Counted from the stretch's first letter, positions 2,080-52,715 are shown. The stretch is DNA of 53,796 nucleotides from Dimorphilus gyrociliatus (GCA_904063045.1 CAJFCJ010000112.1:17203-70998); one strand, 5' to 3'. Program-made: numbers and translations. The notes: generated from the letters alone by a model not told the origin.

Positions 2080-3208
2080 GAAAGTTGGCCTATCATTAAT
2101 TTTTAAACAACTACTCATTTCATCAAATTCATTACAAAAGATCAATTTATGTTATTGTGATTTAGGCAAGAACAACTGTGAAACTCTATCAAATCTGCTT
2201 TCAAACTGTTCAAAAATTGAAAAAGTTAATTTAAGTTGGAATCCAAATGTTGAACACTTTTTACCTAAAATTTGCCAAGCACTTTTAATATCGTCAATTG
2301 GACTCAAAGCTATAAACTTTTGCAATTGTAATTTGGATGGGAATAGTATTAAGAATGTTGCAGATTTATTAAAGAAATGTTGTTCTTTACAAAAAGTTGA
2401 CTTTTCATTGAATAAAGATTTAAAAGACAGCTTGCCTACTATTTTGGATGGACTCTACAATTGTTGTAATACTCTAGCAGAAATTTATTTAAAAAGTTGT
2501 CTTTTAAATGGAAGTATGGCCAGAGAAATTGGTAATTTTTTAAATAACTGCCATAAAATTGAAAAGATCAATTTATCATTTAATGACAATATGGAAAATG
2601 GATTTTTTTATATATGTAAACATCTACACAACTCTTCAAATACTCTAAAAGAAAATACAACAATATCAGAACAAATATTAAGGAATATTGCTGACACATT
2701 AAAATCAGTGAAACAGCTGATAAAGATTGATTTCAAAGGCTGCAATTTAGAAGAGGAACAATGTAGAAAGATTGGAAAGCTTTTCTAAAGTTGCTCTAAA
2801 ATAGACACAATCAACTTGGCATGGAATGTTCAGATGGGAGAAGGATTATTTAACATTTGTAAAGGACTCATCCAATCGTCAAGCTGTTTAAAAGAGATAA
2901 ATTTCGGCTGTTGTAATTTAAACAATGGGCAATGTAGACATATTGGAAACCTTTTTAAAGAATGCGCCAAGCTAGAGACAATCTACCTGACAGGAAATCA
3001 TACAACAGGCAATGGACTATTCTATATTTGTGCACAACTTCTTCATTTGTCAAATACTTTAAAATGCCTCAACTTTACAGAATGTAATTTGAGCGAAGAC
3101 CAGTCTAAAATAATAATTAACTTGTTTAAACACTGTTCAAAACTTAAAAGAATTTCTCTGGAACGGATATGGCATTGCGGAAGTGATCTTTTTGAACTAA
3201 GCAAATAG
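1955..3208 (+). pseudogene. RI-type LRR gene fragment fused in frame to a Tc1 HTH; one in-frame TAA at 2786-2788
   Basis: Alternating LxxINLxxCxL / IEKVNLSWN repeats from 2080. ORFs 1955-2788 and 2816-3208 are in the same frame, separated only by a single stop (LF*SCSKIDTINLAWN). Confidence 0.8.
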
Positions 3209-4606: not shown

Positions 4607-5737
4607 TTACATACATAAAATTTCTTTATATAATGTTTCTACAGCTTTGATTGAATGTTCTAATGAGAAACCCTTTACTGCATATTCAGCACAGTAGGCA
4701 CGTCTAGCTGCTTTATTGCTGTGTTTAAGTTCTTCCATAATGGCATCAGCCAGTTCTAAATCATCTTCTACTTGAACCAGACGACCTACTTTGCTATCAA
4801 TAAAATCTGGTAAACCACCTTGGTTAGTACCCACTACAGGTGTGCCACAAGCAAGGGCTTCAATTGCTACTAGACCAAATGGTTCTGTACGAGAAGGCAC
4901 AACACTTACATCTGCAATATTGTACATTTTAACTAATGTCTCTTGATTAACGTGACCTAAGAAGTATACATGTTCAAGGTCTAAATCTTCTTTCATACGC
5001 TTTAACACACCATAGAGTTCACCATTACCTGCAATAATTGTCATTACTTTACCACAGGTTGATTTTTCGTAACGTTTTGCTGCTTTTAGCAATACATCCA
5101 CACCTTTAAAGTGTGTTAATTTTCCTGCAAAAGCTACGATACAATCTGTTTTGACTGTAACATCAAATTCATTTAAAACAGTTTCTTTACTTAAGTCCAG
5201 AGGATGGAATAAGGATTCATCATAACCATTTAATAAAATCATACGTTTATTGCTCGGCACTTTATACAGTTGTGCTGTTTCAGCATCTACTTGTTTAGAG
5301 ATGGTAATAATCATCTTAGCATTAGCCACCCCTTCTATAGCAAAACTATGGTATCTGTCATCTTTTACAAAGCCTTTTAAATCCGTACCATGGGCAGTAA
5401 TAACATATGGCACACCTGTTAACATAGCAGCATAAGGTGTAATCCATAAATGCTGTGCATGGATAATATCTGGTTTAAAAGTATCTACTTCCTCTTGAAC
5501 CACTTCTATATATTTATCCATGTAAGTCTTCATTTGATCATCTGATAATTCATAATAAGTTGTATTACTTCTTGGATGGGTTGTAAAACATGGAAAATTG
5601 AAATCCACTTCAGGCTTTACTGTATTTGGTCCCTTAAACTTAATGACTCTTGATTCAAATCCTTTATATGTCTTGTCTTCGTGTTCTGGATAAATGATTT
5701 TAACCTTATGGCCAAAACTTACTAAAGCCTTTGCCAA
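4607..5737 (-). CDS. Bacterial-type GT4 (GT-B fold) glycosyltransferase, intronless, 5'-truncated
   Basis: 376-codon open frame with FKPDIIHAQHLW, TAHGTD, FAGKLTHFKGVDVLL and the GT4 E-x7-E motif PSRTEPFGLVAIEALACGTPVV. No ATG at the start (begins TTG in LAKALVSFGHKV), so the first beta-strand is missing. Visibly less AT-rich than its flanks. Confidence 0.9.
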   Translation of the reverse strand: MAKALVSFGHKVKIIYPEHEDKTYKGFESRVIKFKGPNTVKPEVDFNFPCFTTHPRSNTTYYELSDDQMKTYMDKYIEVVQEEVDTFKPDIIHAQHLWITPYAAMLTGVPYVITAHGTDLKGFVKDDRYHSFAIEGVANAKMIITISKQVDAETAQLYKVPSNKRMILLNGYDESLFHPLDLSKETVLNEFDVTVKTDCIVAFAGKLTHFKGVDVLLKAAKRYEKSTCGKVMTIIAGNGELYGVLKRMKEDLDLEHVYFLGHVNQETLVKMYNIADVSVVPSRTEPFGLVAIEALACGTPVVGTNQGGLPDFIDSKVGRLVQVEDDLELADAIMEELKHSNKAARRAYCAEYAVKGFSLEHSIKAVETLYKEILCM

Positions 5738-5850: not shown

Positions 5851-6168
5851 TATGAGAAATTACTGTCAGAAAAAAGGATTTACAAACATCAAAAGAAAAA
5901 GTATATTGGAATCCAAAAGAAAATTTTTGATTTATGGGATGATTTCAACTTGAACAAATTAACATCAACTGATCTATTAATGCAGACATCCCATATCTAC
6001 TCTCCAGCATAAATATCATTTGTCAAGCTTTATTCTTTTTTAATATAATATTTAGTCTTTTAAATACATACTTTTAGATTTATAGCTAAATCTTTTATTC
6101 AAAAATTCAAAAAAAACACGTATAAAAATAGGGTGTGAATGTACCCTGGTGCGAATGTACCCCAACTC
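5851..6168 (+). mobile_element. 3' end of the MULE family (last codons, stop and shortened TIR)
   Basis: YEKLLSEKRIYKHQKKKY...SHIYSPA* plus 3' UTR and TIR ending CCCAACTC, near-identical to the reverse complement of 6731-7110. Confidence 0.9.
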
Positions 6169-6730
6169 TATTATAACATTTATATCTGATACAAAGTCTG
6201 AGACTTTTGTGAAAACTTTCCATGAAGCTTTTTCAATGTATTTGATGATTTTTAAACTGCAAAATTTGGAAAAAGAGCAAAAACTTTTCCAACAATCATT
6301 ATAGGGAGATATTGATGTAAAAATATTGCTGTTTTATTATACCTCAAAACACAAAAAGCTACACAATAATGAATACCAAAATTTTCCTCACATTAATTTA
6401 ATCTTTAGGATGTTATTAGCAATAATTTTTTCATTTCTTAATGGTTAATATAAAAGACAAACAGACATGAAAAATTACCCTTTAAAAGTTTAAAACAATA
6501 TCATCTAATGTGAAAAAAAGACAAACTAAAATTTTACACCTTTTAAAAATTAATCTTTATCAGTGATAAAAAATTTCTAAAAAGCTATCTGATCTTGTTT
6601 TCTTCATCTACATTTAAATTACAAGACACCAAAAGAAGATATTTCATTATCTTTGAAGATTTTTGAAGATCTTCAAAAATAGTAAATAATACATTTCTCA
6701 TTTTAATATTATTACTCAATTATAATTTCA

Positions 6731-9438
6731 GAGTTGGGGTGCGAACGTACCTGGGTGTGAACGTACCCGGGTGCGAACGTACCCTGGGCGGGTGCGAACG
6801 TACCTGGGTACGTTCGCACCCTATTTTTATATTTATTTTATTTTTGAATTTTTGAATAAAAGATTTAGCTATAAATCTAAAAGTATGTATTTAAAAGACT
6901 AAATATTATACTAAAAAACAATAAAGCTTGACAAATGATATTTATGCTGGAGAGTAGATATGGGATGTCTGCATTAATAGATCAATTGATGTCAATTTGT
7001 TCAACTTGAAATCATCCCATAAATCAAAAATTTTCTTTTGGATGTCAATATACTTTTTCTTTTGATGTTTGTAAATCCTTTTTTCTGACAGTAATTTCTC
7101 ATAAACTGCAATCAACTCAGACTCTTTTTTTAGCTCATCAACCAGCATGTAAAAAGAACCTTTAGCAGGCAGCTTACTATTCATTCTTTGATGCCATCCT
7201 TCACAATCATTATTGGTCCTAATAGACAAACCAAAAACTGACCAGTTATTTGGTTTCCATAATTTATTTTTGATCCAGTTTGTTTGGAAGTATTGCAGCA
7301 GGTCCAAAAATCTATTTTTTTCACAAAGTTCTGCATTTATGCTGTCAAATGTTGGTTGAATAATATGTGCTGGCAAGAATGGCAGAGCCATCAATTTTCT
7401 GAAATCTTTCCAATCATTTCCTTTTTCTTTGTATTTCTTTACATAGCCAAGAGCCTATTCAATAATATAAGTTATTTAATAGATAATGTTATATATATTT
7501 GAATGTAACTGACTTGTATTTTCCTGTATACTGCTTGTGTGAAATGAAATACACAACCTTGAAATTCAGTGAGGGGATATACTTTTGATAATGCTTTCCA
7601 TAGTCCTTTTTCAAAATCCATTGTAATTCTTTTTGGATGAAAATCATTGATAAGATTGTTGATATGCTACAAAAAGCAACTTTATTTATCATCACTTTTG
7701 AAGAGATAATATGAAATATTTACTTGAAATGCTTGTAAGTATGCTTTGGTATGCTTTGAAGTCAGAAAAATAAAAACAAGAGGAACTTGCTTCATATCAC
7801 CACTCTTCTTAACAAATGAGTGAATAGTGACAAGTTGATAAAATGGTTCTTTTACAATCTTGAAAGTACCATCAATGTACCAACAGTTGGATTTTGATAA
7901 TAAATTCAGCTGATGGTTTGTTGCAAAGATTAAAATTCTTTCTCCATTTTCACAAATATCTTTCTGCAAAAATTCATCAGGCAAAAATGTTTCATCTAAA
8001 TTAAAGTTGTACACTTTAGGTTCCACTGGCCTAAACTTTTGTCTATTTGAGTTTGCCATTCTCTTCAAATAGTTGATATCAGGAAGACAAGTTGCATTGG
8101 GTTCATAGGATAGAAGAACTTTTTCAGCAATGCTTCTTCCAGATGTTTGATTATCACTTCTGCAAACAATTTTCAAATCTGTTTTCACTTTAATATCCAC
8201 TTCTAAATTCTTTTTTCTGTTGTGATTATGTTCCAAATTGCCTTTGAGAAATAAATTTCCATTTTGTCTTATTCTGGCCACACATCTTTTCTTCTTACTT
8301 CTCACACTGCACACCCAAATAGTACTTGATGGTGTTTTATGTTTAACAACAAAAGAATATCCATCATTCAGTAAAATGTCATGTCCCTTTCTACTTCCTC
8401 CTTTTACAATCTCAAAATCACTTTTTGTGGATGATTCACAATATTCTTCAGCATTCTCTTCAACTTCCTCCAAAGAGTCTAGGTCCATTGATTGGCATTC
8501 TGAAAGAACATGATTTTCATCCTCCAATATTGATTCCTCAACTGCAGCAATCTTATTTCTTTCATCAATAAAGCTTTCTTCAGAATTTACTTTGAATTGA
8601 TGAATTTCCAGATTAGTTAACTTCTTGAGCATGACAGTACATTTTCTTTTGTTACAAGGTTTGCAAATTGGTATGTTATGTGTTTCTATAAGAATATGTT
8701 AAAAAATATAATTACATGAAAGCTGATTAAAGAGTTACATACCTGTGCATTTCCTATGAATAAGATTCTTACAAAGGCTGCATTTCAAATATTTTTGCCT
8801 TCCATAAATTGTTGAATGACAATTGTGACATTTGAAAGCCATTTTTTAATCTTCAATCAAACGTAGATGGTTATCTAAAAATATTTCCAGTTATCAATAA
8901 ATTTCCTTTCCAAATATTCAAAATGGCTGAAATTTTATTTATGAAAAATATTCAGCTTTTTCACAATTGAAGATAGTATATTACATCAAAATATCATGAA
9001 TCAACAATCTCAATGATTAGATATAAATACTCACTTCTGTTGAAGCTTCCAAGAAGAACTTTGTCCAAATTTATTCAGTAAATATAGCTTTACTTTTGCA
9101 AGGATAAATATTCCAAGTGAAAGTTTATTTAATAAAACTATCACTATTAAAATGGCTGCTATTTCACTTTCAACAACATTTTCTTTTAAAGTAGTAATTT
9201 AATATTGATGGGATATGTATTCTATTTAATATCTGCATTCTATCAAATCAATATATTAACAAATATATAATGAAGGAACAGAAGGAAAAAAGGGTGTCAA
9301 TGTACATGTTTATTCAAAAATTCAAAAATAAAATAAATATAAAAATAGGGTGCGAACGTACCCAGGTACGTTCGCACCCGCCCAGGGTACGTTCGCACCC
9401 GGGTACGTTCGCACCCAGGTACGTTCACACCCGACTCC
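6731..9438 (-). mobile_element. Apparently intact autonomous Mutator/MULE (Phantom-like) DNA transposon
   Basis: ~130-bp TIRs built from tandem GGGTGCGAACGTACC units (6731-~6860, ~9310-9437) with GAG...CTC termini. Flanking duplication ATAATTTCA at 6722-6730 and 9439-9447 (9 bp plus one extra C, or 10 bp with one mismatch). Full transposase inside. Confidence 0.93.
6942..8842 (-). CDS. MULE transposase, 4 exons, ~575 aa: PHD-like finger, FLYWCH, DDE domain
   Basis: Hand-built exons 8842-8743, 8685-7724, 7666-7514 and 7454-6942 (GT-AG introns of 57, 57 and 59 nt) keep frame. Motifs: WYIDGTFK (D), ITMDFEKG (D), GCVFHFTQ (CxxH), RTNNDCEGWH (E), FLYWCH WVCSVRSKKKRC...HNH. Confidence 0.9.
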
Positions 9439-12400
9439 ATAATTTCACAATATTTGAACAATTTCTTAACAAATTTCTCAAATTTATTCTTTGTTCTTCA
9501 TTCAAATTACATGAATCCAAGTAAAGCTGTCTCAAAGTATTAGAAGATTTTTGAAGTGCATCACAAAAGTTGAAGCTTCCATTACCAATTCCAATATTGA
9601 CTCTCACTTCTAAATATTCTATATTAGAACAATTTCTTAAGAAATTTCCCAAATTTTTACTTTGTTCTTCATTCAATTGACATGAATACAAGTGCAGCTG
9701 TCTCAAAGTATTAGAAGATTTTTGAAGTGCATCACAAAAGTTGAAGCTTCCATTACCAATTGCAATATTGCAATTCACATTTAAAATTTCTATATTAGAA
9801 CAGTTTCTTAAGAAATTTCCCAAATTTTTACTTTGTTCTTCATTCAAATTACATAACATCAAGTGAAGCTGTCTCAAAGTATTAGAAGATTTTTGAAGTG
9901 CATCACAAAAGTTGAAGCTTCCATTACCAATTGCAAAATTGTAATTCACATTTAAAATTTCTATATTAGAACAGTTTCTTAAGAAATTTCCCAAATTTTT
10001 ACTTTGTTCTTCATTCAATTCACATGAATGCAAGTGAAGCTGTCTCAAAGTATTAGAAGATTTTTGAAGTGCATCACAAAAGTTGAAGCTTCCATTACCA
10101 ATTGCAATATTGTCTCCCACTTCTAAATATTCTATATTAGAACAATTTCTTAAGAAATTTCCCAAATTTTTACTTTGTTCTTGATTCAATTTACATGAAA
10201 ACAAGTTCAGCTGTCTCAAAGTATTAGAAGATTTTTGAAGTGCATCACAAAAGTTGAAGCTTCCATTACCAATTGCAATATTGTAATTCACATTTAAAAT
10301 TTCTATATTAGAACAGTTTCTTAAGAAATTTCCCAAATTTTTACTTTGGTCTTCATTCAATTTACATGAATCCAAGTGCAGATGTCTCAAAGTATTAGAA
10401 GATTTTTCAAGTGCATCACAAAAGTTGAAGTTTCCATTACCAATTGCAATATTGCTTTGCACTTCTAAATATTCTATATTAGAACAGTTTCTTAAGAAAT
10501 TTCCCAAATTTTTACTTTGTTCTTCATTCAATTGACATGAATACAAGTGCAGCTGTCTCAAAGTATTAGAAGATTTTTCAAGCCCATCCAAAATAGCAAA
10601 TAATCCATTACCAATTGCAATATTGTAACTCAAATTTAAAATTTCTATATTACAACAATTTCTTAAGAAATTTCCCAAATTTTTACTTTGTTCTTCATTC
10701 AAATTACATGAAGCCAAGTAAAGCTGTCTCAAAGTATTAGAAGATTTTTGCAGTGCATCACAAAAGTTGAAGCTTCCATTACCAATTGCAATATTGTAAT
10801 TCACATTTAAAATTTCTATATTAGAACAGTTTCTTAAGAAATTTCCCAAATTTTTACTTTGTTCTTCATTCAATTTACATGAATCCAAGTGAAGCTGTCT
10901 CAAAGTATTAGAAGATTTTTGAAGTGCATCACAAAAGTTGAAGCTTCCATTACCAATTGCAATATTGTAATTCACATTTAAAATTTCTATATTAGAAAAG
11001 TTTCTTAAGAAATTTCCCAAATTTTTACTTTGGTCTTCATTCAATTTACATGAATCCAAGTGCAGATGTCTCAAAGTATTAGAAGATTTTTCAAGTGCAT
11101 CACAAAAGTTGAAGTTTCCATTACCAATTGCAATATTGCTTTGCACTTCTAAATATTCTATATTAGAACAGTTTCTTAAGAAATTTCCCAAATTTTTACT
11201 TTGTTCTTGATTCAATTCACATGAAGCCAAGTGCAGCTGTCTCAAAGTATTAGAAAATTTTTGAAGTGCATCACAAAAGTTGAAGTTTCCATTACCAATT
11301 GCAATATTGCTTCCCACATCTAAATATTCTATATTAGAACAATTTCTTAAGCAATTTCCCAAATTTTTACTTTGTTCTTCATTCAAATTACATGAAGCCA
11401 AGTGCAGCTGTCTCAAAGTATTAGAAGATTTTTCAAGTGCATCACAAAAGTTGAAGCTTCCATTACCAATTGCAATATTGCTTCCCACATCTAAATATTC
11501 TATATTAGAACAGTTTCTTAAGAAATTTCCCAAATTTTTACTTTGTTCTTCATTCAATTGACATGAATACAAGTGCAGCTGTCTCAAAGTATTAGAAGAT
11601 TTTTCAAGTCCATCCAAAATAGCAAATAATCCATTACCAATTGCAATATTGTAACTCAAATTTAAAATTTCTATATTACAACAATTTCTTAAGAAATTTC
11701 CCAAATTTTTACTTTGTTCTTCATTCAAATTACATGAAGCCAAGTAAAGCTGTCTCAAAGTATTAGAAGATTTTTGAAGTGCATCACAAAAGTTGAAGCT
11801 TCCATTACCAATTGCAATATTGCTTCCCACTTCTAAATATTCTATATTAGAACAGTTTCTTAAGAAATTTCCCAAATTTTTACTTTGTTCTTCATTCAAT
11901 TCACATGAAAACAAGTGCAGCTCTCTCAAAGTATTAGAAGATTTTTGAAGTGCATCACAAAAGGTGAAGCTTCCATTACCAATTGCAATATTGTAATTCA
12001 CATTTAAAATTTCTATATTAGAACAGTTTCTTAAGCAATTTCCCAAATTTATACTTTGTTCTTCATTCAAATTACATGAAGCCAAGTGAAGCTCTCTCAA
12101 AGTATTAGAAGATTTTTGAAGTGATTGACAAACATTAAATATCCCATTTCCCACATTTATATTTCCTTGAAGATTTAATGTTTTAATTGATGAAGAATCC
12201 TTTATGAGATGTTCAATTTCCCAACAGTGTTGTTCATTTAAGTTAGAGTTAGGGAAACTTACTACTGTTATGTCTTGTCCTAATTCTATTGATTCAGCTA
12301 AGTCATTTATTTTCTTGTCAGTATTATTCTGTGTAGAGAGTTCTACAATTTCATTGCTTTCATTTTCAAAATACTTTTTTAGTTTTAAAAATTTTGTCAT

Positions 12401-13111
12401 TTGAAGCTCATCAAAATATTTTATATCATTTTCTTTTATTTTATCCAAACTGTGATGAAAAATGTAGTTTGTGTGTATATTATTAAAGATTTCTAAGGTT
12501 GTTTTTAAGGAAGTTTCGAAAAGACTTTCCAATTTGTCACTTTGATTTGTAAATGTTTTAAAAAAGCTATCTCTCAAATCATTTAATTGAATATATTTGT
12601 GTCTTATATATTCAAATTCCAATTTCAAGTTAATCATTGCTTTCCTTTCATAGTCATCAATTTTTGCTAAAATATTTTTTGTACTTTCTTGGTCTTTTAA
12701 GAAGACTGTATTCAGTTTTTCTTTTAATTTTGCCAATTTGATCATTGAAATTGTAGAGCATTTTTCATGATTTTCATCCAAACAGAAAATACATAAATTT
12801 TCAATATTATGTGTTTTACAATACATTAATCCCTCCTTACCATGATTGTTGCAAAGGTTTTTTTCTTGACATTCTATTGATTGTTCCACTCGATTTTTTT
12901 GTATTTGATCAAATTGGCCAAAAGGTATTTTGACTTGGTTTCTGCAAGTTGGACAGGTTATTTCATGATTGTGAACTGGTAATTGTTGTACACATTTGAA
13001 GCAAAAGGTATGTTGACAAGGAAATATCCTAGGATCATTCCCTATCCAGGATTCTAAACAAATTGCACATTCTAAAGTTTGCTGATTTATAACATATTGT
13101 AAGGTAGCCAT
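9425..13111 (-). CDS. TRIM-like E3 ligase (RING, B-box, coiled-coil) with ~16 C-terminal RI-type LRR units, intronless, ~1228 aa
   Basis: RING CAIC...PCQHTFCFKC...CPTC; B-box CNNH...YCKTH...CIFC...HEKC; helical linker; then 15 full 57-aa units plus one partial unit. The last 4 codons and the stop (WSRV*) come from the MULE TIR. Confidence 0.9.
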   Translation of the reverse strand: MATLQYVINQQTLECAICLESWIGNDPRIFPCQHTFCFKCVQQLPVHNHEITCPTCRNQVKIPFGQFDQIQKNRVEQSIECQEKNLCNNHGKEGLMYCKTHNIENLCIFCLDENHEKCSTISMIKLAKLKEKLNTVFLKDQESTKNILAKIDDYERKAMINLKLEFEYIRHKYIQLNDLRDSFFKTFTNQSDKLESLFETSLKTTLEIFNNIHTNYIFHHSLDKIKENDIKYFDELQMTKFLKLKKYFENESNEIVELSTQNNTDKKINDLAESIELGQDITVVSFPNSNLNEQHCWEIEHLIKDSSSIKTLNLQGNINVGNGIFNVCQSLQKSSNTLRELHLASCNLNEEQSINLGNCLRNCSNIEILNVNYNIAIGNGSFTFCDALQKSSNTLRELHLFSCELNEEQSKNLGNFLRNCSNIEYLEVGSNIAIGNGSFNFCDALQKSSNTLRQLYLASCNLNEEQSKNLGNFLRNCCNIEILNLSYNIAIGNGLFAILDGLEKSSNTLRQLHLYSCQLNEEQSKNLGNFLRNCSNIEYLDVGSNIAIGNGSFNFCDALEKSSNTLRQLHLASCNLNEEQSKNLGNCLRNCSNIEYLDVGSNIAIGNGNFNFCDALQKFSNTLRQLHLASCELNQEQSKNLGNFLRNCSNIEYLEVQSNIAIGNGNFNFCDALEKSSNTLRHLHLDSCKLNEDQSKNLGNFLRNFSNIEILNVNYNIAIGNGSFNFCDALQKSSNTLRQLHLDSCKLNEEQSKNLGNFLRNCSNIEILNVNYNIAIGNGSFNFCDALQKSSNTLRQLYLASCNLNEEQSKNLGNFLRNCCNIEILNLSYNIAIGNGLFAILDGLEKSSNTLRQLHLYSCQLNEEQSKNLGNFLRNCSNIEYLEVQSNIAIGNGNFNFCDALEKSSNTLRHLHLDSCKLNEDQSKNLGNFLRNCSNIEILNVNYNIAIGNGSFNFCDALQKSSNTLRQLNLFSCKLNQEQSKNLGNFLRNCSNIEYLEVGDNIAIGNGSFNFCDALQKSSNTLRQLHLHSCELNEEQSKNLGNFLRNCSNIEILNVNYNFAIGNGSFNFCDALQKSSNTLRQLHLMLCNLNEEQSKNLGNFLRNCSNIEILNVNCNIAIGNGSFNFCDALQKSSNTLRQLHLYSCQLNEEQSKNLGNFLRNCSNIEYLEVRVNIGIGNGSFNFCDALQKSSNTLRQLYLDSCNLNEEQRINLRNLLRNCSNIVKLWSRV
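9450..12120 (-). repeat. Coding tandem array of 171-bp (57-aa, 28+29) LRR units
   Basis: Unit SSNTLRQLHLxSCxLNEEQSKNLGNFLRNCSNIExLxVxxNIAIGNGSFNFCDALQK is repeated with very high nucleotide identity. Confidence 0.97.
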
Positions 13112-13243
13112 TTTTTTATTGATCATGGATTTTTGTATTTTTAGTTTCAGTTTAACATATATCAAAATATATTTTTTTTTAATTTCTTTTATTTTTTAAG
13201 AATGTAAAATTTTTAGTATACAATATATATAAAATTTTAAAAT

Positions 13244-14599: not shown

Positions 14600-14986
14600 A
14601 TTGACAGCAGACACATTTCTACCTGATAAATTGCTGAACATTTTTCCAAAAGCTCACCAGCACAAATATCACTATTTTGAAATTCATCCCAAATTTCATA
14701 ATTATTCTACTGTATGTTGGTATAGTTTTTTTTTTGTATCCTACAAATCTTCTTTTCTGATAGTAGCTTTTGATAAACATCAATTAGATCACTTTCTCTC
14801 TTTAATTCATCTACAGTGCAATAAAATGAAGAATTTTCTTGTAAATTTCTATTAAATTTGTTGTGGAAACCTTCCAAGTCATTATTTGTTGGAATAGCTC
14901 TCTTAAACACTGACCAATTATTTGGTAACCAGAGAATATTGTATATCCATGTGTCCTCCATGTATTTAACAAGATCACGTAATTTG
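14600..14986 (-). mobile_element. Relic of a related MULE (last exon)
   Basis: WLPNNWSVFKRAIPTNNDLEGFHNKFN...DELKRESDLIDVYQKLLSEKKI parallels the catalytic-E exon of the intact transposase. Confidence 0.85.
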
Positions 14987-16813
14987 TCTTCTAATACTTT
15001 GAGACAGCTGCACTTGTATTCATGTCAATTGAATGAAGAACAAAGTAAAAATTTGGGAAATTTCTTAAGAAACTGTTCTAATATAGAATATTTAGATGTG
15101 GGAAGCAATATTGCAATTGGTAATGGAAGCTTCAACTTTTGTGATGCACTTGAAAAATCTTCTAATACTTTGAGACAGCTGCACTTGGCTTCATGTAATT
15201 TGAATGAAGAACAAAGTAAAAATTTGGGAAATTGCTTAAGAAATTGTTCTAATATAGAATATTTAGATGTGGGAAGCAATATTGCAATTGGTAATGGAAA
15301 CTTCAACTTTTGTGATGCACTTCAAAAATTTTCTAATACTTTGAGACAGCTGCACTTGGCTTCATGTGAATTGAATCAAGAACAAAGTAAAAATTTGGGA
15401 AATTTCTTAAGAAACTGTTCTAATATAGAATATTTAGAAGTGCAAAGCAATATTGCAATTGGTAATGGAAACTTCAACTTTTGTGATGCACTTGAAAAAT
15501 CTTCTAATACTTTGAGACATCTGCACTTGGATTCATGTAAATTGAATGAAGACCAAAGTAAAAATTTGGGAAATTTCTTAAGAAACTTTTCTAATATAGA
15601 AATTTTAAATGTGAATTACAATATTGCAATTGGTAATGGAAGCTTCAACTTTTGTGATGCACTTCAAAAATCTTCTAATACTTTGAGACAGCTTCACTTG
15701 GATTCATGTAAATTGAATGAAGAACAAAGTAAAAATTTGGGAAATTTCTTAAGAAACTGTTCTAATATAGAAATTTTAAATGTGAATTACAATATTGCAA
15801 TTGGTAATGGAAGCTTCAACTTTTGTGATGCACTTCAAAAATCTTCTAATACTTTGAGACAGCTTTACTTGGCTTCATGTAATTTGAATGAAGAACAAAG
15901 TAAAAATTTGGGAAATTTCTTAAGAAATTGTTGTAATATAGAAATTTTAAATTTGAGTTACAATATTGCAATTGGTAATGGATTATTTGCTATTTTGGAT
16001 GGGCTTGAAAAATCTTCTAATACTTTGAGACAGCTGCACTTGTATTCATGTCAATTGAATGAAGAACAAAGTAAAAATTTGGGAAATTTCTTAAGAAACT
16101 GTTCTAATATAGAATATTTAGATGTGGGAAGCAATATTGCAATTGGTAATGGAAGCTTCAACTTTTGTGATGCACTTGAAAAATCTTCTAATACTTTGAG
16201 ACAGCTGCACTTGGCTTCATGTAATTTGAATGAAGAACAAAGTAAAAATTTGGGAAATTGCTTAAGAAATTGTTCTAATATAGAATATTTAGATGTGGGA
16301 AGCAATATTGCAATTGGTAATGGAAACTTCAACTTTTGTGATGCACTTCAAAAATTTTCTAATACTTTGAGACAGCTGCACTTGGCTTCATGTGAATTGA
16401 ATCAAGAACAAAGTAAAAATTTGGGAAATTTCTTAAGAAACTGTTCTAATATAGAATATTTAGAAGTGCAAAGCAATATTGCAATTGGTAATGGAAACTT
16501 CAACTTTTGTGATGCACTTGAAAAATCTTCTAATACTTTGAGACATCTGCACTTGGATTCATGTAAATTGAATGAAGACCAAAGTAAAAATTTGGGAAAT
16601 TTCTTAAGAAACTTTTCTAATATAGAAATTTTAAATGTGAATTACAATATTGCAATTGGTAATGGAAGCTTCAACTTTTGTGATGCACTTCAAAAATCTT
16701 CTAATACTTTGAGACAGCTTCACTTGCATTCATGTGAATTGAATGAAGAACAAAGTAAAAATTTGGGAAATTTCTTAAGAAACTGTTCTAATATAGAAAT
16801 TTTAAATGTGAAT
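14987..16813 (+). repeat. Orphan LRR array (10.7 units), inverted copy of the TRIM-LRR repeats, no RING/B-box upstream
   Basis: Same 171-bp units. Contains a 6-unit (1026-bp) higher-order duplication (identical antisense ORFs at 15025 and 16051). Starts abruptly after a MULE relic and runs into the N gap. Confidence 0.92.
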
Positions 16814-17532
16814 NNNNNNNNNNNNNNNNNNNNNNNNNNNNNNNNNNNNNNNNNNNNNNNNNNNNNNNNNNNNNNNNNNNNNNNNNNNNNNNNNNNNNNN
16901 NNNNNNNNNNNNNNNNNNNNNNNNNNNNNNNNNNNNNNNNNNNNNNNNNNNNNNNNNNNNNNNNNNNNNNNNNNNNNNNNNNNNNNNNNNNNNNNNNNNN
17001 NNNNNNNNNNNNNNNNNNNNNNNNNNNNNNNNNNNNNNNNNNNNNNNNNNNNNNNNNNNNNNNNNNNNNNNNNNNNNNNNNNNNNNNNNNNNNNNNNNNN
17101 NNNNNNNNNNNNNNNNNNNNNNNNNNNNNNNNNNNNNNNNNNNNNNNNNNNNNNNNNNNNNNNNNNNNNNNNNNNNNNNNNNNNNNNNNNNNNNNNNNNN
17201 NNNNNNNNNNNNNNNNNNNNNNNNNNNNNNNNNNNNNNNNNNNNNNNNNNNNNNNNNNNNNNNNNNNNNNNNNNNNNNNNNNNNNNNNNNNNNNNNNNNN
17301 NNNNNNNNNNNNNNNNNNNNNNNNNNNNNNNNNNNNNNNNNNNNNNNNNNNNNNNNNNNNNNNNNNNNNNNNNNNNNNNNNNNNNNNNNNNNNNNNNNNN
17401 NNNNNNNNNNNNNNNNNNNNNNNNNNNNNNNNNNNNNNNNNNNNNNNNNNNNNNNNNNNNNNNNNNNNNNNNNNNNNNNNNNNNNNNNNNNNNNNNNNNN
17501 NNNNNNNNNNNNNNNNNNNNNNNNNNNNNNNN
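16814..17532. other. Assembly gap (719 N)
   Basis: Run of N. Confidence 1.
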
Positions 17533-19721
17533 TAAATAAATTTCAGCCATTTTGAATATTTGGAAAGGAATTTATTGATAACTGGAAATGATTTTTAGAT
17601 AACCATCTACATTTGATTGAAGATTAAAAAATGGCTTTCAAATGTCACAATTGTCATTCAACAATTTATGGAAGGCAAAATATTTGAAATGCAGCCTTTG
17701 TAAGAATCTTTTCATAGGAAATGCACAGGTATGTAACTCTTTACATCAGCTTTCATGTAATTATATTTTTTAAATATTCTTATAGAACACATAAATACCA
17801 ATTTGCAAACCTTGTAACAAAGAAAATGTACTGTCATGCTCAAGAAGTTAACTAATCTGGAAATTCATCAATTCAAAGTAAATTCTGAAGAAAGCTTTAT
17901 TGATGAAGAAATAAGATTGCTGGCAGTTGAGGAATCAATATTGGAGGATGAAAATCATGTTCTTTCGAGAATGCCATCAATGGACTAGATCTTTGGAGGA
18001 AGTTGAAGAGAATGCTGAAGAATATTGTGAATCATCCACAAAAAGTGATTTTTGAGATTGTAAAAGGAGGAAGTAGAAAGGGACATGACATTTTACTGAA
18101 TGATGGATATTCTTTTGTTGTTAAACATAAACACCATCAAGTACTATTTGGGTGTGCAGTGTGAGAAGTAAGAAGAAAAGATGTGTGGCAGAATAAGACA
18201 AAATGGAATTTATTTCTAAAGGCAATTTGGAACATAATCACACAGAAAAAGAATTTAGAAGTGGATATTAAAGTGAAAACAGATTTGAAAATTGTTTGCA
18301 GAAGTGATAATCAAACATCTGGAAGAAGCATTGCTGAAAAAGTTCTTCTATCCTATGAACCCAATGCAACTTGTCTTCCTGATATCAACTATTTGAAGAG
18401 AATGGCAAACTCAAATAGACAAAGTTTAGGCCAGTGGAACTAAAGTGTACAACTTTAATTTAGATGAAACATTTTTGCCTGATGAATTTTTGCAGAAAGA
18501 TATTTGTGAAAATGGAGAAGAATTTTAATCTTTGCAACAAACCATCAGCTGAATTTATTATCAAAATCCAACTGTTGGTACATTGATGGTACTTTCAAGA
18601 TTGTAAAGAACCATTTTATCAACTTGTCACTATTCACTCATTTGTTAAGAAGAGTGGTGATATGAAGCAAGTTCTCTTGTTTTTATTTTTCTGACTTCAA
18701 AGCTACCAAAGCATACTTACAAGCATTTCAAGTAAATATTTCATATTATCTCTTCAAAAGTGATGATAATAAAGTTGCTTTTTTGTAGCATATCAACAAT
18801 CTTATCAATGATTTTCATCCAAAAAGAATTACAATGGATTTTGAAAAAGGACTATGGAAAGCATTATCAAAAGTATATCCCTCACTGAATTTCAAGGTTG
18901 TGTATTTCATTTCACACAAGCAGTATACAGGAAAATACAAGTCAGTTACATTCAAATATATATAACATTATCTATTAAATAACTTATATTATTGAATAGG
19001 CTCTTGGCTATGTAAAGAAATACAAAGAAAAAGGAAATGATTGGAAAGATTTCAGAAAATTGATGGCTCTGCCATTCTTGCCAGCACATATTATTCAACC
19101 AACATTTGACAGCATAAATGCAGAACTTTGTGAAAAAATAGATTTTTGGACCTGCTGCAATACTTCCAAACAAACTGGATCAAAAATAAATTATGGAAAC
19201 CAAATAACTGGTCAGTTTTTGGTTTGTCTATTAGGACCAATAATGATTGTGAAGGATGGCATCAAAGAATGAATAGTAAGCTGCCTGCTAAAGGTTCTTT
19301 TTACATGCTGGTTGATGAGCTAAAAAAGAGTCTGAGTTGATTGCAGTTTATGAGAAATTACTGTCAGAAAAAAGGATTTACAAACATCAAAAGAAAAAGT
19401 ATATTGACATCCAAAAGAAAATTTTTGATTTATGGGATGATTTCAAGTTGAACAAATTGACATCAATTGATCTATTAATGCAGACATCCCATATCTACTC
19501 TCCAGCATAAATATCATTTGTCAAGCTTTATTGTTTTTTAGTATAATATTTAGTCTTTTAAATACATACTTTTAGATTTATAGCTAAATCTTTTATTCAA
19601 AAATTCAAAAATAAAATAAATATAAAAATAGGGTGCGAACGTACCCAGGTACGTTCGCACCCGCCCAGGGTACGTTCGCACCCGGGTACGTTCACACCCA
19701 GGTACGTTCGCACCCCAACTC
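17533..19721 (+). mobile_element. Near-identical copy of the 6731-9438 MULE (5' end lost in the gap, many 1-nt indels)
   Basis: Reverse complement of ~8941-6731; ends with the TIR CCCCAACTC directly against NLR LRR sequence. Confidence 0.93.
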
Positions 19722-22700
19722 GAGTCCAACACATATCACTTTAAAGCCATTCCTCATCTTTCTATTATATGAGAAATCAACATTGTCCAATGCTGAACAG
19801 TGTTTAAATGTTTCTCCTAAACTTTGAGCTTGTTATCATTCAAATCACACAACAAGATTAATTGTTTTCATAGACATTGAAGAAGATTTGAGCCCATCAC
19901 ATATCACTTTAAAGCCATTCCACATTTTCTATTACATGAGAAATCAACATTCTCCAATGCTGAACAGTGTTTAAATGTTTCTCCTAAACTTTGAGCTTGT
20001 TCATCATTCAAATCACACTCACAAGTTTAATTGTTTTCATAGACATTGAAGAAGATTTGAGCCATCACATATCCTTTAAAGCCATTCCCATGTTACTATT
20101 CTCTGAGAAATCAACATTCTCCAATGCTGAACAGTGTTTAAATGTTTCTCCTATACTTTGAGCTTGTTCATCATTCAAATCACACTCACCAAGTTTAATT
20201 ATTTTCAGAGACATTGAAGAAGATTTGAGCCCATCACATATCACTTTAAAGCCATTTCCCATGTTACTATTCCATGAGAAATCAACATTCTCCAATGCTG
20301 AACAGTGTTTAAATGTTTCTCCTAAACTTTGAGCTTGTTCATCATTCAAATCACACCAATGAAGATTAATTGTTTTCATAGACATTGAAGAAGATTTGAG
20401 TCAACACATATCACTTTAAAGCCATTCCTCTAATAGTATTTAAATGTTTCTCCTAAACTTTGAGCTTGTTCATCATTCAAATCACACCCAAAAAAATTAA
20501 GTGTTTTCATAGACATTGAAGAAGATTTGAGCCCATCACATATACCTTTAAAGCCATTTCCCATGTTACTATTCCCTGAGAAATCAACATTCTCTAATGC
20601 TGAACAGTGTTTAAATGTTTCTCCTAAACTTTGAGCTTGTTCATCATTCAAATGACACCCATCAAGTTTAATTATTTTCAGAGACATTGAAGAAGATTTG
20701 AGTCCACACATATCACTTTAAAGCCATTCCTCATCTTTCTATTATATGAGAAATCAACATTGTCCAATGCTGAACAGTGTTTAAATGTTTCTCCTAAACT
20801 TTGAGCTTGTTTATCATTCAAATCACACCAACCAAGATTAATTGTTTTCATAGACATTGAAGAAGATTTGAGCCCATCACATATCACTTTAAAGCCATTC
20901 CACATCTTTCTATTACATGAGAAATCAACATTCTCCAATGCTGAACAGTGTTTAAATGTTTTTCCTAAACTTTGAGCTTGTTCATCATTCAAATCACACT
21001 CACCAAGTTTAATTGTTTTCATAGACATTGAAGAAGATTTGAGCCCATCACATATCCCTTTAAAGCCATTCCCCATGTTACTATTCTCTGAGAAATCAAC
21101 ATTCTCCAATGCTGAACAGTGTTTAAATGTTTCTCCTAAACTTTGAGCTTGTTCATCATTCAAATCACACCAACCAAGATTAATTGTTTTGATAGACATT
21201 GAAGAAGATTTGAGCCCATCACATATCCCTTTAAAGCTATTCCCCGTGTTTTTATTAAATCTGAAATCAACATCCTCCAATGCTGAACAGTGTTTAAATG
21301 TTTCTCCTAAACTTTGAGCTTGTTCATCATTCAAATCACACCAACCAAGATTAATTGTTTTCATAGACATTGAAGAAGATTTGAGCCCATCACATATCAC
21401 TTTAAAGCCATTCCGCATCTTTCTATTACATGAGAAATCAACATTCTCCAATACCGAACAGTGTTTAAATGTTTCTCCTAAACTTTGAGCTTGTTCATCA
21501 TTCAAATCACACCAACCAAGATTAATTGTTTTGATAGACATTGAAGAAGATTTGAGCCCATCACATATCCCTTTAAAGCTATTCCCCGTGTTTTTATTAA
21601 ATCTGAAATCAACATCCTCCAATGCTGAACAGTGTTTAAATGTTTCTCGTAAACTTTGAGCTTGTTCAGCATTGAAATCACACCAACCAAGATTAATTGT
21701 TTTCATAGACATTGAAGAAGATTTGAGCCCATCACATATCCCTTTAAAGCCATTCCCCATGTTTTTATTCAATGACAAATCAACATTCTCCAATTCTGAA
21801 CAGTGTTTAAATGTTTCTCCTATACTTTGAGCTTGTTCATCATTCAAATCACACTCACCAAGTTTAATTGTTTTCATAGACATTGAAGAAGATTTGAGCC
21901 CATCACATATACCTTTAAAGCCATTTCCCATGTTACTATTCCCTGAGAAATCAACATTCTCCAATGCTGAACAGTCTTTAAATGTTTCTCCTAAACTTTG
22001 AGCTTGTTCATCATTCAAATCACACTCACCAAGTTTAATTGTTTTCATAGACATTGAAGAAGATTTGAGCCCATCACATATCCCTTTAAAGCCATTCCCC
22101 ATGTTACTATTCTCTGAGAAATCAACATTCTCCAATGCTGAACAGTGTTTAAATGTTTCTCCTAAACTTTGAGCTTGTTCATCATTCAAATCACACCCAT
22201 CAAGTGTAATTGTTTTCATAGACATTGAAGAAGATTTGAGTCCAACACATATCACTTTAAAGCCATTCTGCATCTTTCTATTACATGAGAAATCAACATT
22301 CTCCAATGCTGAACAGTGGTTAAATGTTTCTCCTAAACTTTGAGCTTGTTCATCATTCAAATCACACCCACTAAGATTAATTGTTTTCATAGACATTGAA
22401 GAAGATTTGAGTCCAACACATATCACTTTAAAGCCATTCCTCATCTTTCTATTACGTGAGAAATCAACATTCTCCAATGCTGAATAGTATTTAAATGTTT
22501 CTCCTAAACTTTGAGCTTGTTCATCATTTAACTGACACCAATTAAGATTAATTGTTTTCATAGACATTGAAGAAGATTTGAGTCCATCACATATCCCTTT
22601 AAAGCCATTCCTCATGTTTCTATTACATGAGAAATCAACATTCTCCAATGCTGAACAGTGTTTAAATGTTTCTCCTAAACTTTGAGCTTGTTCATCATTT

Positions 22701-51900: not shown

Positions 51901-52715
51901 CAAAGTTTAGGAGAAACATTTAAACACTGTTCAGCATTGGAGAATGTTGATTTCTCAGGGAATAGTAACATGGGGAATGGCTTTAAAGGTATATGTGATG
52001 GACTCAAATCTTCTTCAATGTCTATGAAAACAATTAAACTTGATGGGTGTCATTTGAATGATGAACAAGCTCAAAGTTTAGGAGAAACATTTAAACACTG
52101 TTCAGCATTGGAGAATGTTGATTTCTCATGGAATAGGGAGATGGGGAATGGCTTTAAAGGTATATGTGTTGGACTCAAATCTTCTTCAATGTCTATGAAA
52201 ACAATTAAACTTCATGGGTGTTATTTGAATGATGAACAAGCTCAAAGTTTAGGAGAAACATTTAAACACTGTTCAGCATTGGAGGATGTTGATTTCAGAT
52301 TGAATGAAAACATGGGGAATAGCTTTAAAAGGATATGTGATGGGCTCAAATCTTCTTCAATGTCTATGAAAACAATTAATCTTGGTTGGTGTTATTTGAA
52401 TGATGAACAAGCTCAAAGTTTAGGAGAAACATTGAAACACTGTTCAGCATTGGAGAATGTTGATTTCTCATGGAATAGTAACATGGGGAATGGCTTTAAT
52501 GGGATATGTGATGGACTCAAATCTTCTTCAATGTCTATGAAAACAATTACAGTTGTTGAGTTATTTGAATGATGAACAAGCTCAAAGTTTAGGAGAAACA
52601 TTTAAACACTGTTCAGCATTGGAGAATGTTGATTTCTCATATAATAGAAGATAGGAATGGCTTTAAAGTGATATGTGTTGGACTCGAGTTGGGGTGCGAA
52701 CGTACCTGGGTGTGA
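45907..52715 (+). CDS. NLR copy A: death-fold-like N-terminus, NACHT, ~22-23 RI-type LRR units (open to 50145, then indel-broken; ends in the MULE TIR)
   Basis: 1412-aa ORF with Walker A LIQGEPGIGKS, Walker B IILLLDGADE, CKVPLL and the winged-helix motif YHLSFQEYFAAKYL. 57-aa LRR units run from ~48790 to 52685. The ~95-aa helical N-terminus is called death-fold by position and pattern only. Confidence 0.9.

What the first reader, a model, noticed from the sequence alone, without database searches (positions are those of the whole stretch)
9425..13111. RING-B-box-coiled-coil fused to a hypervariable NLR-style LRR sensor
Seen: a complete TRIM tripartite motif followed by ~16 RI-type 57-aa units of the same class as the neighbouring NLRs. 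Variation is concentrated at LxxLxLxx positions (YS/AS/DS/HS/FS/ML; DVGS/EVQS/NVNY/NLSY/EVRV). Known: the standard mammalian TRIM C-terminal classes (PRY-SPRY, NHL, COS-FN3, PHD-BROMO, MATH, ARF, TM) do not include LRRs, and concave beta-strand residues form LRR ligand surfaces. Inference: an NLR-type recognition module grafted onto an E3 ligase, i.e. a variable intracellular sensor that ubiquitinates its target directly (TRIM5-like logic with an LRR). Strong candidate for an undescribed immune receptor class.
Basis: partly seen in the sequence, partly recalled or inferred. Interest (0 to 1): 0.85.

Follow-up and report, generated by a model that had tools for sequence, protein, structure and literature searches.

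The report
TRIM-like E3 ligase with LRR tail
This is an intact, intronless gene of a small marine worm (Dimorphilus or a close relative) that joins a TRIM-type ubiquitin-ligase head to a long leucine-rich-repeat array of the kind its neighbouring NLR immune genes carry. It belongs to a lineage-specific multi-copy family that I did not find described in the literature I could search.

Summary
One open frame (9425-13111, minus strand, 1228 aa from the likely start) encodes four parts:
- a RING finger;
- a B-box2, seen only at family-profile and structure level;
- a long amphipathic helix;
- 16 exact 57-aa ribonuclease-inhibitor-type LRR double units.

Differences between units pile up at the 12 positions expected on the concave face. 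dN/dS there is 3.7-10.7, against 0.5-0.6 elsewhere.

The gene is not unique. At least 33 protein clusters share the architecture. Every named one is an uncharacterised Dimorphilus gyrociliatus protein. The rest come from one unlabelled run series. First-stage readers of this scan noted the same architecture at 17 other places in this genome (unchecked).

The head is closest to TRIM2/TRIM3/NHL-1. The LRR unit is the class used by the local NACHT-LRR genes.

A Mutator-like transposon sits exactly on the stop codon. It adds four residues and supplies a new stop.

I read it as a cytosolic E3 ligase whose LRR chooses the target, probably in immunity. Ligase activity, ligand, expression and immune role are inferred, not shown.

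It is a new variant of a known kind: a TRIM with a new C-terminal sensor, mirroring the fish finTRIM/NLR sharing of B30.2, and functionally like LRSAM1. Interest is moderate.

The parts
9425..13111 (-). Complete coding sequence of the TRIM-like RBCC-LRR gene: 1228 aa from the ATG at 13111, stop at 9425-9427, no intron.
   Evidence: ORF list. The start was chosen from the family alignment. Chance of such an open frame is about 3e-46. No transmembrane segment or signal-like N-terminus.
12941..13072 (-). RING finger (C3HC4). All eight zinc ligands are present, together with the Ile between the first Cys pair and an Arg right after the last Cys (CPTCR).
   Evidence: Pfam zf-RING_2, zf-RING_UBOX and zf-C3HC4 hits. 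C14, C17, H33, C36, C39, C52 and C55 are invariant and C31 is at least 90% conserved in 31 family members. The model matches the TRIM2 RING at TM 0.8, rmsd 2.0 A, 36% identity.
12758..12853 (-). B-box type 2 zinc finger: C-x2-H-x7-C-x2-H-x5-C-x2-C-x4-H-x2-C.
   Evidence: The ligands are at least 90% conserved in the family. The profile hits TRIM3, TRIM21 and TRIM29 B-box regions. Model pLDDT is above 95. Foldseek matches TRIM21 RING-B-box and TRIM5alpha B-box-coiled coil. The Pfam B-box model itself does not hit this sequence.
12515..12745 (-). Long amphipathic helix, the putative coiled coil, directly after the B-box.
   Evidence: AlphaFold helices 122-184 and 190-198, with pLDDT about 90. 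Hydrophobic periodicity peaks at 3.5-3.6. The profile alignment to TRIM3 extends to profile position 203.
12173..12361 (-). Degenerate N-terminal LRRs that cap the array and link the head to the repeat units. A low-confidence linker lies upstream, at 12362-12514.
   Evidence: The model shows alternating strand/helix elements from residue 253.
9437..12172 (-). Sixteen 57-aa (171-nt) RI/NLR-type LRR double units. Units 1 and 16 are the most diverged. Pairs 4/10, 7/11 and 3/9 are near-identical.
9425..9438 (-). Present C-terminal tail (last base of Leu, then W-S-R-V and the stop), encoded by the end of the inserted transposon.
   Evidence: Read from the sequence and the TIR coordinates.
6731..9438 (.). 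Mutator-like element inserted on the original stop codon. It has 124-nt terminal inverted repeats and a 9-bp target duplication TGAAATTAT at 6722-6730 and 9439-9447. It carries a FLYWCH-domain ORF at 7682-8632. An AATAAA lies at 9314 on the gene's strand.
6585..6719 (-). Degenerate 17th LRR unit, in frame after the pre-insertion stop. It is a relic of a formerly longer array.
14984..16813 (+). Headless inverted partial copy of the same array (units 5-6-7-8-9-4/10-5-6-7-8/13, with 0-2 mismatches per unit). It starts mid-unit next to a transposase fragment and runs into a 719-N assembly gap.

Best explanation
The gene is an intact member of a lineage-specific, multi-copy, intronless family found in the miniature annelid Dimorphilus gyrociliatus, and possibly in relatives.

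**Shown.**
- A TRIM-type head (RING, B-box2, helix), nearest to TRIM2/TRIM3/NHL-1, is followed directly by an RI/NLR-type LRR solenoid.
- The 57-aa LRR unit is of the same class as the units of the local NACHT-LRR genes.
- The array has grown by recent unit duplication. Unit differences concentrate on the predicted concave face, with dN above dS.

**Inferred.**
- The protein is cytosolic.
- The LRR concave surface binds a target.
- The RING recruits a ubiquitin-loaded E2, so that the target, or the protein itself as a signal, is ubiquitinated. This is the logic of TRIM5alpha/TRIM21 and of LRSAM1.
- The family serves innate immunity alongside the NLRs. In effect the same sensor module is placed on two alternative effector heads, a NACHT NTPase or a RING ligase.

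**The transposon.** A Mutator-like element landed on the stop codon. It replaced the stop with four residues plus a new stop, and probably supplies the present 3' end of the transcript.
For: **Architecture and intact frame:**

**TRIM homology of the head:** profile hits to TRIM2/3, TRIM21, TRIM72 and KAP1, and Foldseek hits to the same proteins. Outside the family, the RING's nearest sequence relatives are nhl-1/TRIM2/3-like proteins.

**A family, not a one-off:**
- 33 of the best 150 representatives carry head plus LRR units.
- All named ones are D. gyrociliatus proteins.
- Three copies lie in tandem in L001.
- First readers noted 17 other places in this genome (unchecked).
- Array length ranges from 1 to 17 matched unit stretches.

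**The junction is real:** contigs from four runs span 12095-13127.

**Shared LRR class with NLRs:**. Another family member lies about 6 kb from a NACHT-caspase gene.

**Diversification:**
- dN/dS is 3.7 (all units) or 10.7 (interior units) at concave positions, against 0.5-0.6 elsewhere.
- Variant counts are 23 nonsynonymous to 0 synonymous there (binomial P about 0.015), and the placement beats random columns in all but 2 of 100,000 draws.

**RING looks competent by sequence:** the ligands, the Ile in CAIC, and CPTCR are all present. Their roles rest on general knowledge of RING E3s.

**Context from papers:** the genome paper reports that the few expanded families are mostly locally duplicated immune genes (PMC7854359).

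**Cytosolic:** no transmembrane segment or signal peptide.
Against: - There is no functional data of any kind. Ligase activity, dimerisation, ligand and immune role are all inferred.
- Expression is unproven. The only hint is run X1, of unknown kind, where depth is 462-644 inside the gene against 3.4 upstream. The same run lacks exact contigs for the first 140 nt of the coding sequence.
- The exact protein is not on record in the protein collection, so it seems unannotated.
- The transposon at the stop codon may impair 3' end formation. A headless inverted copy and an assembly gap lie 1.8 kb upstream, so the region is in flux.
- The predicted coiled coil (about 63-77 residues) is shorter than in the TRIM structures it matches.
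- The dN/dS comparison is between repeat units of one gene. The pairs are not independent, and the number of underlying events is small.
- Different contact residues on different repeats are expected for any LRR that binds an asymmetric ligand, immune or not.
Confidence: 0.6

Rival explanations
1. It is a functional E3 ligase, but not a pathogen sensor. The LRR acts as an ordinary substrate receptor (as in F-box/LRR proteins), or it binds the related LRRs of the neighbouring NLRs to control their abundance. That would make it a regulator of NLR signalling rather than a receptor.
For: - LRRs are common substrate receptors of E3 complexes (general knowledge).
- The LRR unit class is shared with the local NLRs, and the genes cluster with them.
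- Mammalian TRIMs regulate NLRs, for example TRIM27-NOD2 (PMC3400628, listed).
Against: - The family is lineage-restricted and has many diverged copies with variable array length.
- Nonsynonymous change is in excess at concave positions.
- These features are more typical of genes tracking changing ligands than of housekeeping receptors.
Confidence: 0.17
2. This particular copy is a dead or dying gene. The frame is still open only because the array was homogenised recently. The transposon at the stop codon and the nearby rearrangement have silenced it, and the pattern of unit differences was inherited from functional ancestors.
For: - A MULE sits on the stop codon and a relic 17th unit lies beyond it.
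- A headless inverted copy and a gap lie next door.
- The product is absent from the protein collection.
- There is no firm expression evidence.
Against: - 3.7 kb of frame is uninterrupted in AT-rich DNA.
- All RING and B-box ligands are intact.
- The insertion changes only the last residues and brings an AATAAA 110 nt downstream.
- The N-terminal part is 99.4-99.8% identical to the window in the contigs that span it, in four runs.
Confidence: 0.18
3. The fusion, or the number of units, is an assembly artefact of a repeat-rich region.
For: - Units are near-identical.
- An inverted duplicate with 0 mismatches per unit abuts a 719-N gap.
Against: - Independent short-read contigs from four runs cross the head/LRR junction.
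- The same architecture is found in many other genes, including annotated single-exon ones.
- The 2.7-kb array is short relative to long reads. Only the exact unit count remains uncertain.
Confidence: 0.04

Closest known systems
TRIM2 / TRIM3 / NHL-1 (TRIM-NHL group)
   Same: It is the best sequence and structure match for the head. The TRIM3 RBCC matches at E 7e-17 over RING, B-box and coiled coil. The TRIM2 RING matches at TM 0.8 and 36% identity. nhl-1-like proteins are the nearest RING relatives outside the family.
   Different: Those proteins end in filamin and NHL repeats, whereas this one ends in RI-type LRRs. They are conserved, low-copy genes. This family is lineage-specific and multi-copy.
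TRIM5alpha / TRIM21 / fish finTRIMs (immune TRIMs with B30.2)
   Same: All have an RBCC head plus a C-terminal recognition domain that diversifies at ligand-contact positions and sits in expanded gene families. In fish the recognition domain is shared with NLRs by exon shuffling (PMC2657112), which is the mirror image of what is seen here.
   Different: Here the recognition domain is an LRR solenoid, not PRY-SPRY. No antiviral or other function has been shown.
LRSAM1 (LRR, coiled coil, SAM, RING)
   Same: It combines an LRR with a RING E3 in one cytosolic protein. The LRR binds bacteria or their molecular patterns and the RING ubiquitinates them, in mammals and in an oyster (PMC8567218; PMC11863841). 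This is the closest functional analogue of the proposed mechanism.
   Different: The domain order is reversed, with the LRR first and the RING last. It has a SAM domain, no B-box and a different LRR class, and it is a single-copy conserved gene. No homology beyond the shared domain types was tested or found here.
NLRC3-like NACHT-LRR receptors, including the ones in this window
   Same: They share the 28+29-residue RI-type LRR, organised in 57-aa units. Unit consensus identity to the local NLR is 39%. LRR-only hits go to NLRC3-like and NLRP proteins.
   Different: No NACHT or other NTPase domain is present in this gene. The head is a ubiquitin ligase module.

Membership tests
TRIM / RBCC proteins | N-terminal C3HC4 RING finger | tested here: met
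   Pfam RING models score above their cut-offs. The ligands are conserved across the family. The model matches the TRIM2 RING at TM 0.8.
TRIM / RBCC proteins | B-box zinc finger following the RING | tested here: met
   The Pfam B-box model misses this sequence. However, the eight B-box2 ligands are at least 90% conserved in 31 relatives. The family profile aligns through the B-box of TRIM3, TRIM21 and TRIM29. The model has pLDDT above 95 there and matches TRIM21 and TRIM5alpha B-boxes.
TRIM / RBCC proteins | Coiled coil directly after the B-box that forms an antiparallel dimer | tested here: inconclusive
   A confident 63-residue amphipathic helix follows the B-box, and Foldseek matches the TRIM5alpha and KAP1 B-box-coiled-coil regions. 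It is shorter than in those structures, and dimerisation could not be modelled.
TRIM / RBCC proteins | One of the 11 characterised C-terminal domain classes | tested here: not met
   The C-terminus is an RI-type LRR array. The review PMC5620554 speaks of 11 classes. That none of them is an LRR rests on my own knowledge of the Short and Cox classification.
TRIM / RBCC proteins | E3 ubiquitin (or ubiquitin-like) ligase activity | not testable with these tools
   Only sequence hints are available: the Ile in CAIC, the Pro in CPTC, and an Arg after the last Cys.
NLR (NACHT-LRR) receptors | Central NACHT / STAND NTPase domain | tested here: not met
   There is no NACHT hit in this protein, whereas the neighbouring ORF 45907-50145 has one.
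NLR (NACHT-LRR) receptors | C-terminal RI-type LRR array | tested here: met
   The array has 16 units of 28+29 residues with the LxxLxLxx(C/N)xL pattern. The unit model cross-hits the local NLR arrays at 20-35 bits per unit.
LRSAM1 | N-terminal LRR, SAM domain and C-terminal RING | tested here: not met
   The order is reversed and there is no SAM hit. The likeness is functional only.
F-box/LRR (FBXL) substrate receptors | F-box that docks to SKP1 | tested here: not met
   There is no F-box domain hit. The only related match is to an LRR model from an F-box protein (PF24758).

The most novel reading that the evidence does not exclude
Dinophilid annelids run a modular cytosolic recognition system. 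One rapidly diversifying pool of 57-aa LRR cassettes is mounted on two alternative effector heads, a NACHT NTPase (NLRs) or a TRIM ubiquitin ligase. The TRIM-LRR proteins would then be true pattern or effector sensors that tag their ligand with ubiquitin directly. That would be a third solution beside vertebrate TRIM-SPRY and LRSAM1. Transposon-rich clusters may drive the cassette turnover.
Probability: 0.3. Interest if true: 0.75.

Novelty: new variant of a known kind. Interest (0 to 1): 0.55.

Why it matters
TRIM proteins and NLRs are two pillars of animal cell-autonomous immunity. How their recognition domains are exchanged is known mainly from fish, where the B30.2 domain moved between the two families.

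Here the exchange seems to have gone the other way. An NLR-type LRR sits on a TRIM head, in a spiralian with a very compact genome that kept few expanded families. If the proteins prove to be ligand-directed ligases, three things follow:
- They would extend the TRIM repertoire by a new sensor class.
- They would be a natural example of an LRR-programmed E3 ligase.
- They would offer a small, tractable animal in which to study how repeat-cassette duplication and diversification create new specificities.

If they are not expressed or not active, the family is just one more product of domain shuffling in invertebrate immune gene clusters.

Tried and rejected
1. **Word-indexed homolog search.** The head, searched within the full-length protein's size range, found nothing. 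The exhaustive representative search later showed this was a sensitivity limit, not absence.
2. **Single-sequence AlphaFold run.** It was uninformative, with pLDDT 43. The run with the family alignment worked.
3. **Ciliate origin.** I considered this because the ESM Atlas's nearest clusters were ciliate RING/B-box proteins and unlabelled B-box+LRR_4/LRR_8 clusters. I rejected it once the real homologs proved to be Dimorphilus proteins. Those Atlas rows score mostly below 0.9 and involve another LRR class. They remain an untested lead for convergent B-box-LRR fusions in other organisms.
4. **The 893-aa 'ORF' at 14858-17539 as a second gene.** Rejected. It is read through 719 N and has no head.
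5. **C-terminal truncation by the transposon.** Rejected. The 9-bp target duplication shows the original stop lay at the insertion point.
6. **Exact-product look-up of this gene.** It found nothing.
7. **Literature searches.** Searches for six hyphenated names for this architecture, and for TRIM plus LRR architectures in invertebrates, found no description. The library lacks many subscription papers.
8. **Organism of runs SRR23372216-231.** These runs hold most unnamed family members, and their organism could not be determined. GC is 28.5%, like the window, and there is no near-identical DNA.
Full report
**What is there**

The window is AT-rich (29% GC). Positions 9425-13165 on the minus strand hold one uninterrupted frame of 1246 codons. 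In DNA of this composition a random frame of that length stays open with a probability of about 3e-46. The family alignment places the start at the ATG at 13111 (MATLQYVINQQTLECAICL...), giving 1228 residues. There is no transmembrane segment and no signal-like N-terminus.

**The head**

- **RING.** Pfam RING models hit residues 13-56 above their cut-offs.
- **B-box, first pass.** The Pfam B-box model does not hit, and a single-sequence structure prediction was poor.
- **Finding relatives.** An exhaustive HMMER search of 1.84 billion representatives with the first 330 residues found 1904 proteins, 72 of them at E<=1e-10. The best reached only 35% identity.
- **B-box, family level.** In an alignment of 31 relatives' N-termini, seven RING ligands are invariant and the eighth (C31) is at least 90% conserved. 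Eight further ligands are also at least 90% conserved: C86 H89 C97 H100 C106 C109 H114 C117. Their spacing is that of a type-2 B-box.
- **Profile against solved structures.** The best hits are TRIM2 and TRIM3. The TRIM3 hit (8amr, E 7e-17) aligns through RING, B-box and into the coiled coil. TRIM21, TRIM56, TRIM72 and KAP1 follow.
- **Structure.** With the alignment, AlphaFold gives pLDDT 82.8 overall and above 90 for RING, B-box and a helix at 122-184. Foldseek returns TRIM21 RING-B-box, the KAP1 tripartite motif, the TRIM2 RING (TM 0.8, rmsd 2 A) and TRIM5alpha B-box-coiled coil.
- **Helix.** It has a 3.5-3.6 hydrophobic period.

The tripartite motif is therefore real. One caveat remains: the helix is shorter than in the solved TRIMs, and its dimerisation is untested.

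**The tail**

From residue 332 (counted from the TTG at 13165) the protein is 16 units of exactly 57 residues. At DNA level this is a 171-nt repeat of 15.6 copies at 90% matches. Each unit is an RI-type pair:
- a 28-residue repeat with Cys at position 9 (LRQLHLASCNLNEEQSKNLGNFLRNCSN);
- a 29-residue repeat with Asn at position 9 (IEILNVNYNIAIGNGSFNFCDALQKSSNT).

Two or three degenerate LRRs precede unit 1. Units 1 and 16 are the most diverged. Interior units differ by 1-30 of 171 nt, and pairs 4/10, 7/11 and 3/9 are near-identical. This indicates recent intragenic duplication or conversion.

**Where the units differ**

Entropy peaks at unit positions 2, 3, 31, 34, 55 and 57, then 11, 27 and 29. 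Before looking at substitutions I fixed 12 columns as the x positions of LxxLxLxx(N/C)xL in both repeats.

| Measure | 12 concave columns | other 45 columns |
|---|---|---|
| Nei-Gojobori dN/dS, all 16 units | 3.7 | 0.5 |
| Nei-Gojobori dN/dS, interior units | 10.7 | 0.6 |
| Distinct variant codons, nonsynonymous: synonymous | 23: 0 | 16: 4 |

For the concave columns the neutral binomial P is about 0.015. Random sets of 12 columns collect as many nonsynonymous variants in only 2 of 100,000 draws.

Three caveats apply. The units share ancestry, so the pairs are not independent. The number of events is small. The comparison is between repeats, not between alleles.

**A family, not a singleton**

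- Of the 150 best representatives, 33 carry both the head and units matching a model of this gene's unit. They have 1 to 17 matched unit stretches and lengths of 391-1366 aa.
- Every one with a name is an 'unnamed protein product' or 'RING-type domain-containing protein' of Dimorphilus gyrociliatus. This identifies the genome as this miniature annelid or a close relative.
- The remaining members come from one run series, SRR23372216-231, of unknown organism. GC there is 28.5%, and one contig has three copies in tandem.
- A profile search of the 5.8-billion-protein collection found the full architecture only in these sources. Beyond them, hits matched either the LRR part alone (NLRC3-like, NLRP) or the RING part alone (nhl-1, TRIM2/3-like). 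Only 8000 candidates were scored, so absence elsewhere is not proven.
- First-stage readers of this scan noted the same architecture at 17 other places in this genome. Those notes are unchecked and I did not use them as evidence.
- The exact product of this gene is not in the collection, so this copy seems unannotated.

**The fusion is not an assembly chimera**

Logan contigs of four public runs, under two organism labels, each cover 12095-13127. That span runs from the first LRR unit through the head. The spanning contigs differ from the window by 2-6 letters over 530-1030 bases.

**Relation to the NLRs**

The window also holds a NACHT-LRR ORF (45907-50145) and two further LRR arrays (19949-23651 and 50201-52458). 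Their 57-aa unit has the consensus ...NMGNGFKGICDGLKSSSMSMKTIKLxxCDLNDEQAQSLGETFKHCSALE..., which has the same layout as the TRIM-LRR unit.

Consensus identity between the local NLR unit and this gene's unit is 39%. Other TRIM-LRR paralogs are 33-53% identical to this gene's unit, and 20-49% identical to the NLR unit. So the two head types use one LRR unit class, but there is no sign of a recent exchange at this locus. In the public assembly, another family member lies about 6 kb from a NACHT-caspase gene.

**The 3' end**

A Mutator-like element occupies 6731-9438. It has 124-nt inverted terminal repeats that are 98% complementary, and a FLYWCH-domain ORF. The 9-bp sequence TGAAATTAT flanks it on both sides, at 6722-6730 and 9439-9447.

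With a single copy of that 9-mer, the frame reads ...NCSNIVKL followed by a stop. So the element landed on the stop codon. The protein now ends ...VKLWSRV, with its stop inside the terminal repeat. An AATAAA follows about 110 nt further on. Beyond the element, in frame after the old stop, lies a degenerate 17th unit (6585-6719). This shows the array was once longer.

About 1.8 kb upstream of the gene, on the other strand, lies a headless partial copy of the array. Its units match units 5-10 of the gene with 0-2 mismatches. It starts mid-unit beside a transposase fragment and runs into a 719-N gap. The 893-aa 'ORF' listed there is an artefact of reading through N.

**Expression**

This is not established. 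In run X1, whose kind is unknown, word depth is 462-644 inside the gene and 3.4 in the upstream spacer. In the DNA runs the two are similar. That contrast is compatible with transcription, but equally with coverage bias. X1 also lacks exact contigs for the first 140 nt of the coding sequence.

**Mechanism**

Shown: an RBCC head with all zinc ligands. It also has the residues that in other RINGs contact the E2 and the ubiquitin-loaded E2 (the Ile in CAIC, the Pro in CPTC, and an Arg after the last Cys; their roles rest on my general knowledge of RING E3s). A long LRR solenoid follows, and its putative concave face has diversified.

Inferred: the LRR binds a target and the RING ubiquitinates it, or builds a signalling chain on itself. 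This would parallel TRIM5alpha and TRIM21, and LRSAM1, whose LRR binds bacteria that its RING then ubiquitinates (PMC8567218; oyster homolog, PMC11863841).

The immune reading rests on four indirect points:
- clustering with NLRs;
- lineage-specific expansion;
- diversification at concave positions;
- the genome paper's remark that the few expanded families of this worm are mostly locally duplicated immune genes (PMC7854359).

The rivals are a non-immune or NLR-regulating E3, a recently silenced copy, and (unlikely) an assembly artefact.

**Novelty**

No paper in the searchable library contains any of six hyphenated names for this architecture. Broader searches, and the genome paper with its supplements, gave no description of it.

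A TRIM review counts 11 C-terminal classes (PMC5620554). To my knowledge none of them is an LRR.

The principle is not new, however. TRIMs and NLRs already share a sensor domain in fish, through exon shuffling of B30.2 (PMC2657112). LRR-plus-RING ligases also exist. I therefore class this as a new variant of a known kind, of moderate interest and worth an expression and ubiquitination test.

Noticed in passing
window 6722-9447: A Mutator-like element with 124-nt terminal inverted repeats built from a 16-nt GGGTGCGAACGTACC motif, a 9-bp target duplication and a FLYWCH-domain ORF. The same motif arrays recur at 19631-19715 and 52692-52776, next to the ends of the two other LRR arrays, and in weaker form at 6131-6161.
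   Followed up: partly
window 14984-17532: A headless inverted copy of units 5-10 of the TRIM-LRR array, with 0-2 mismatches per 171 nt. It is bounded by a transposase fragment (14707-14961, minus strand) and a 719-N assembly gap (16814-17532). The listed 893-aa ORF is read through N.
   Followed up: yes
window 45907-50145, 19949-23651, 50201-52458, 2111-3148: An intronless NACHT-LRR ORF of 1412 aa, plus further LRR arrays with 57-aa units of the same class. Their variation falls in the same two slots: the xx before C or N.
   Followed up: partly
window 4607-5737 (minus strand): An intronless bacterial-type GT4 glycosyltransferase ORF. It also hits the Pfam model 'GT4 in conflict systems' (E 2e-12), and it lies between LRR fragments. 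GT4-TRADD-N-LRR fusions are reported in cnidarians (PMC8195603).
   Followed up: no
window 37746-39008 (minus strand) and 39762-41063 (plus strand): Two head-to-head intronless ORFs with C1q/TNF-like domains. One of them has two C1q stretches.
   Followed up: no
window 6585-6719 (minus strand): A degenerate 17th LRR unit, in frame after the pre-insertion stop codon of the TRIM-LRR gene. The array was once longer.
   Followed up: yes
L001 147-11647; L004 10001-22139: Three RBCC-LRR genes of about 1170 aa lie in tandem in a contig of run SRR23372229 (organism unknown). In the public D. gyrociliatus assembly, a 712-aa family member lies about 6 kb from a NACHT plus caspase-domain gene.
   Followed up: partly
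P0073 (L003 1464-5564): A 1366-aa relative with 17 matched LRR unit stretches aligns to the query only from the B-box onward. It may lack the RING.
   Followed up: no
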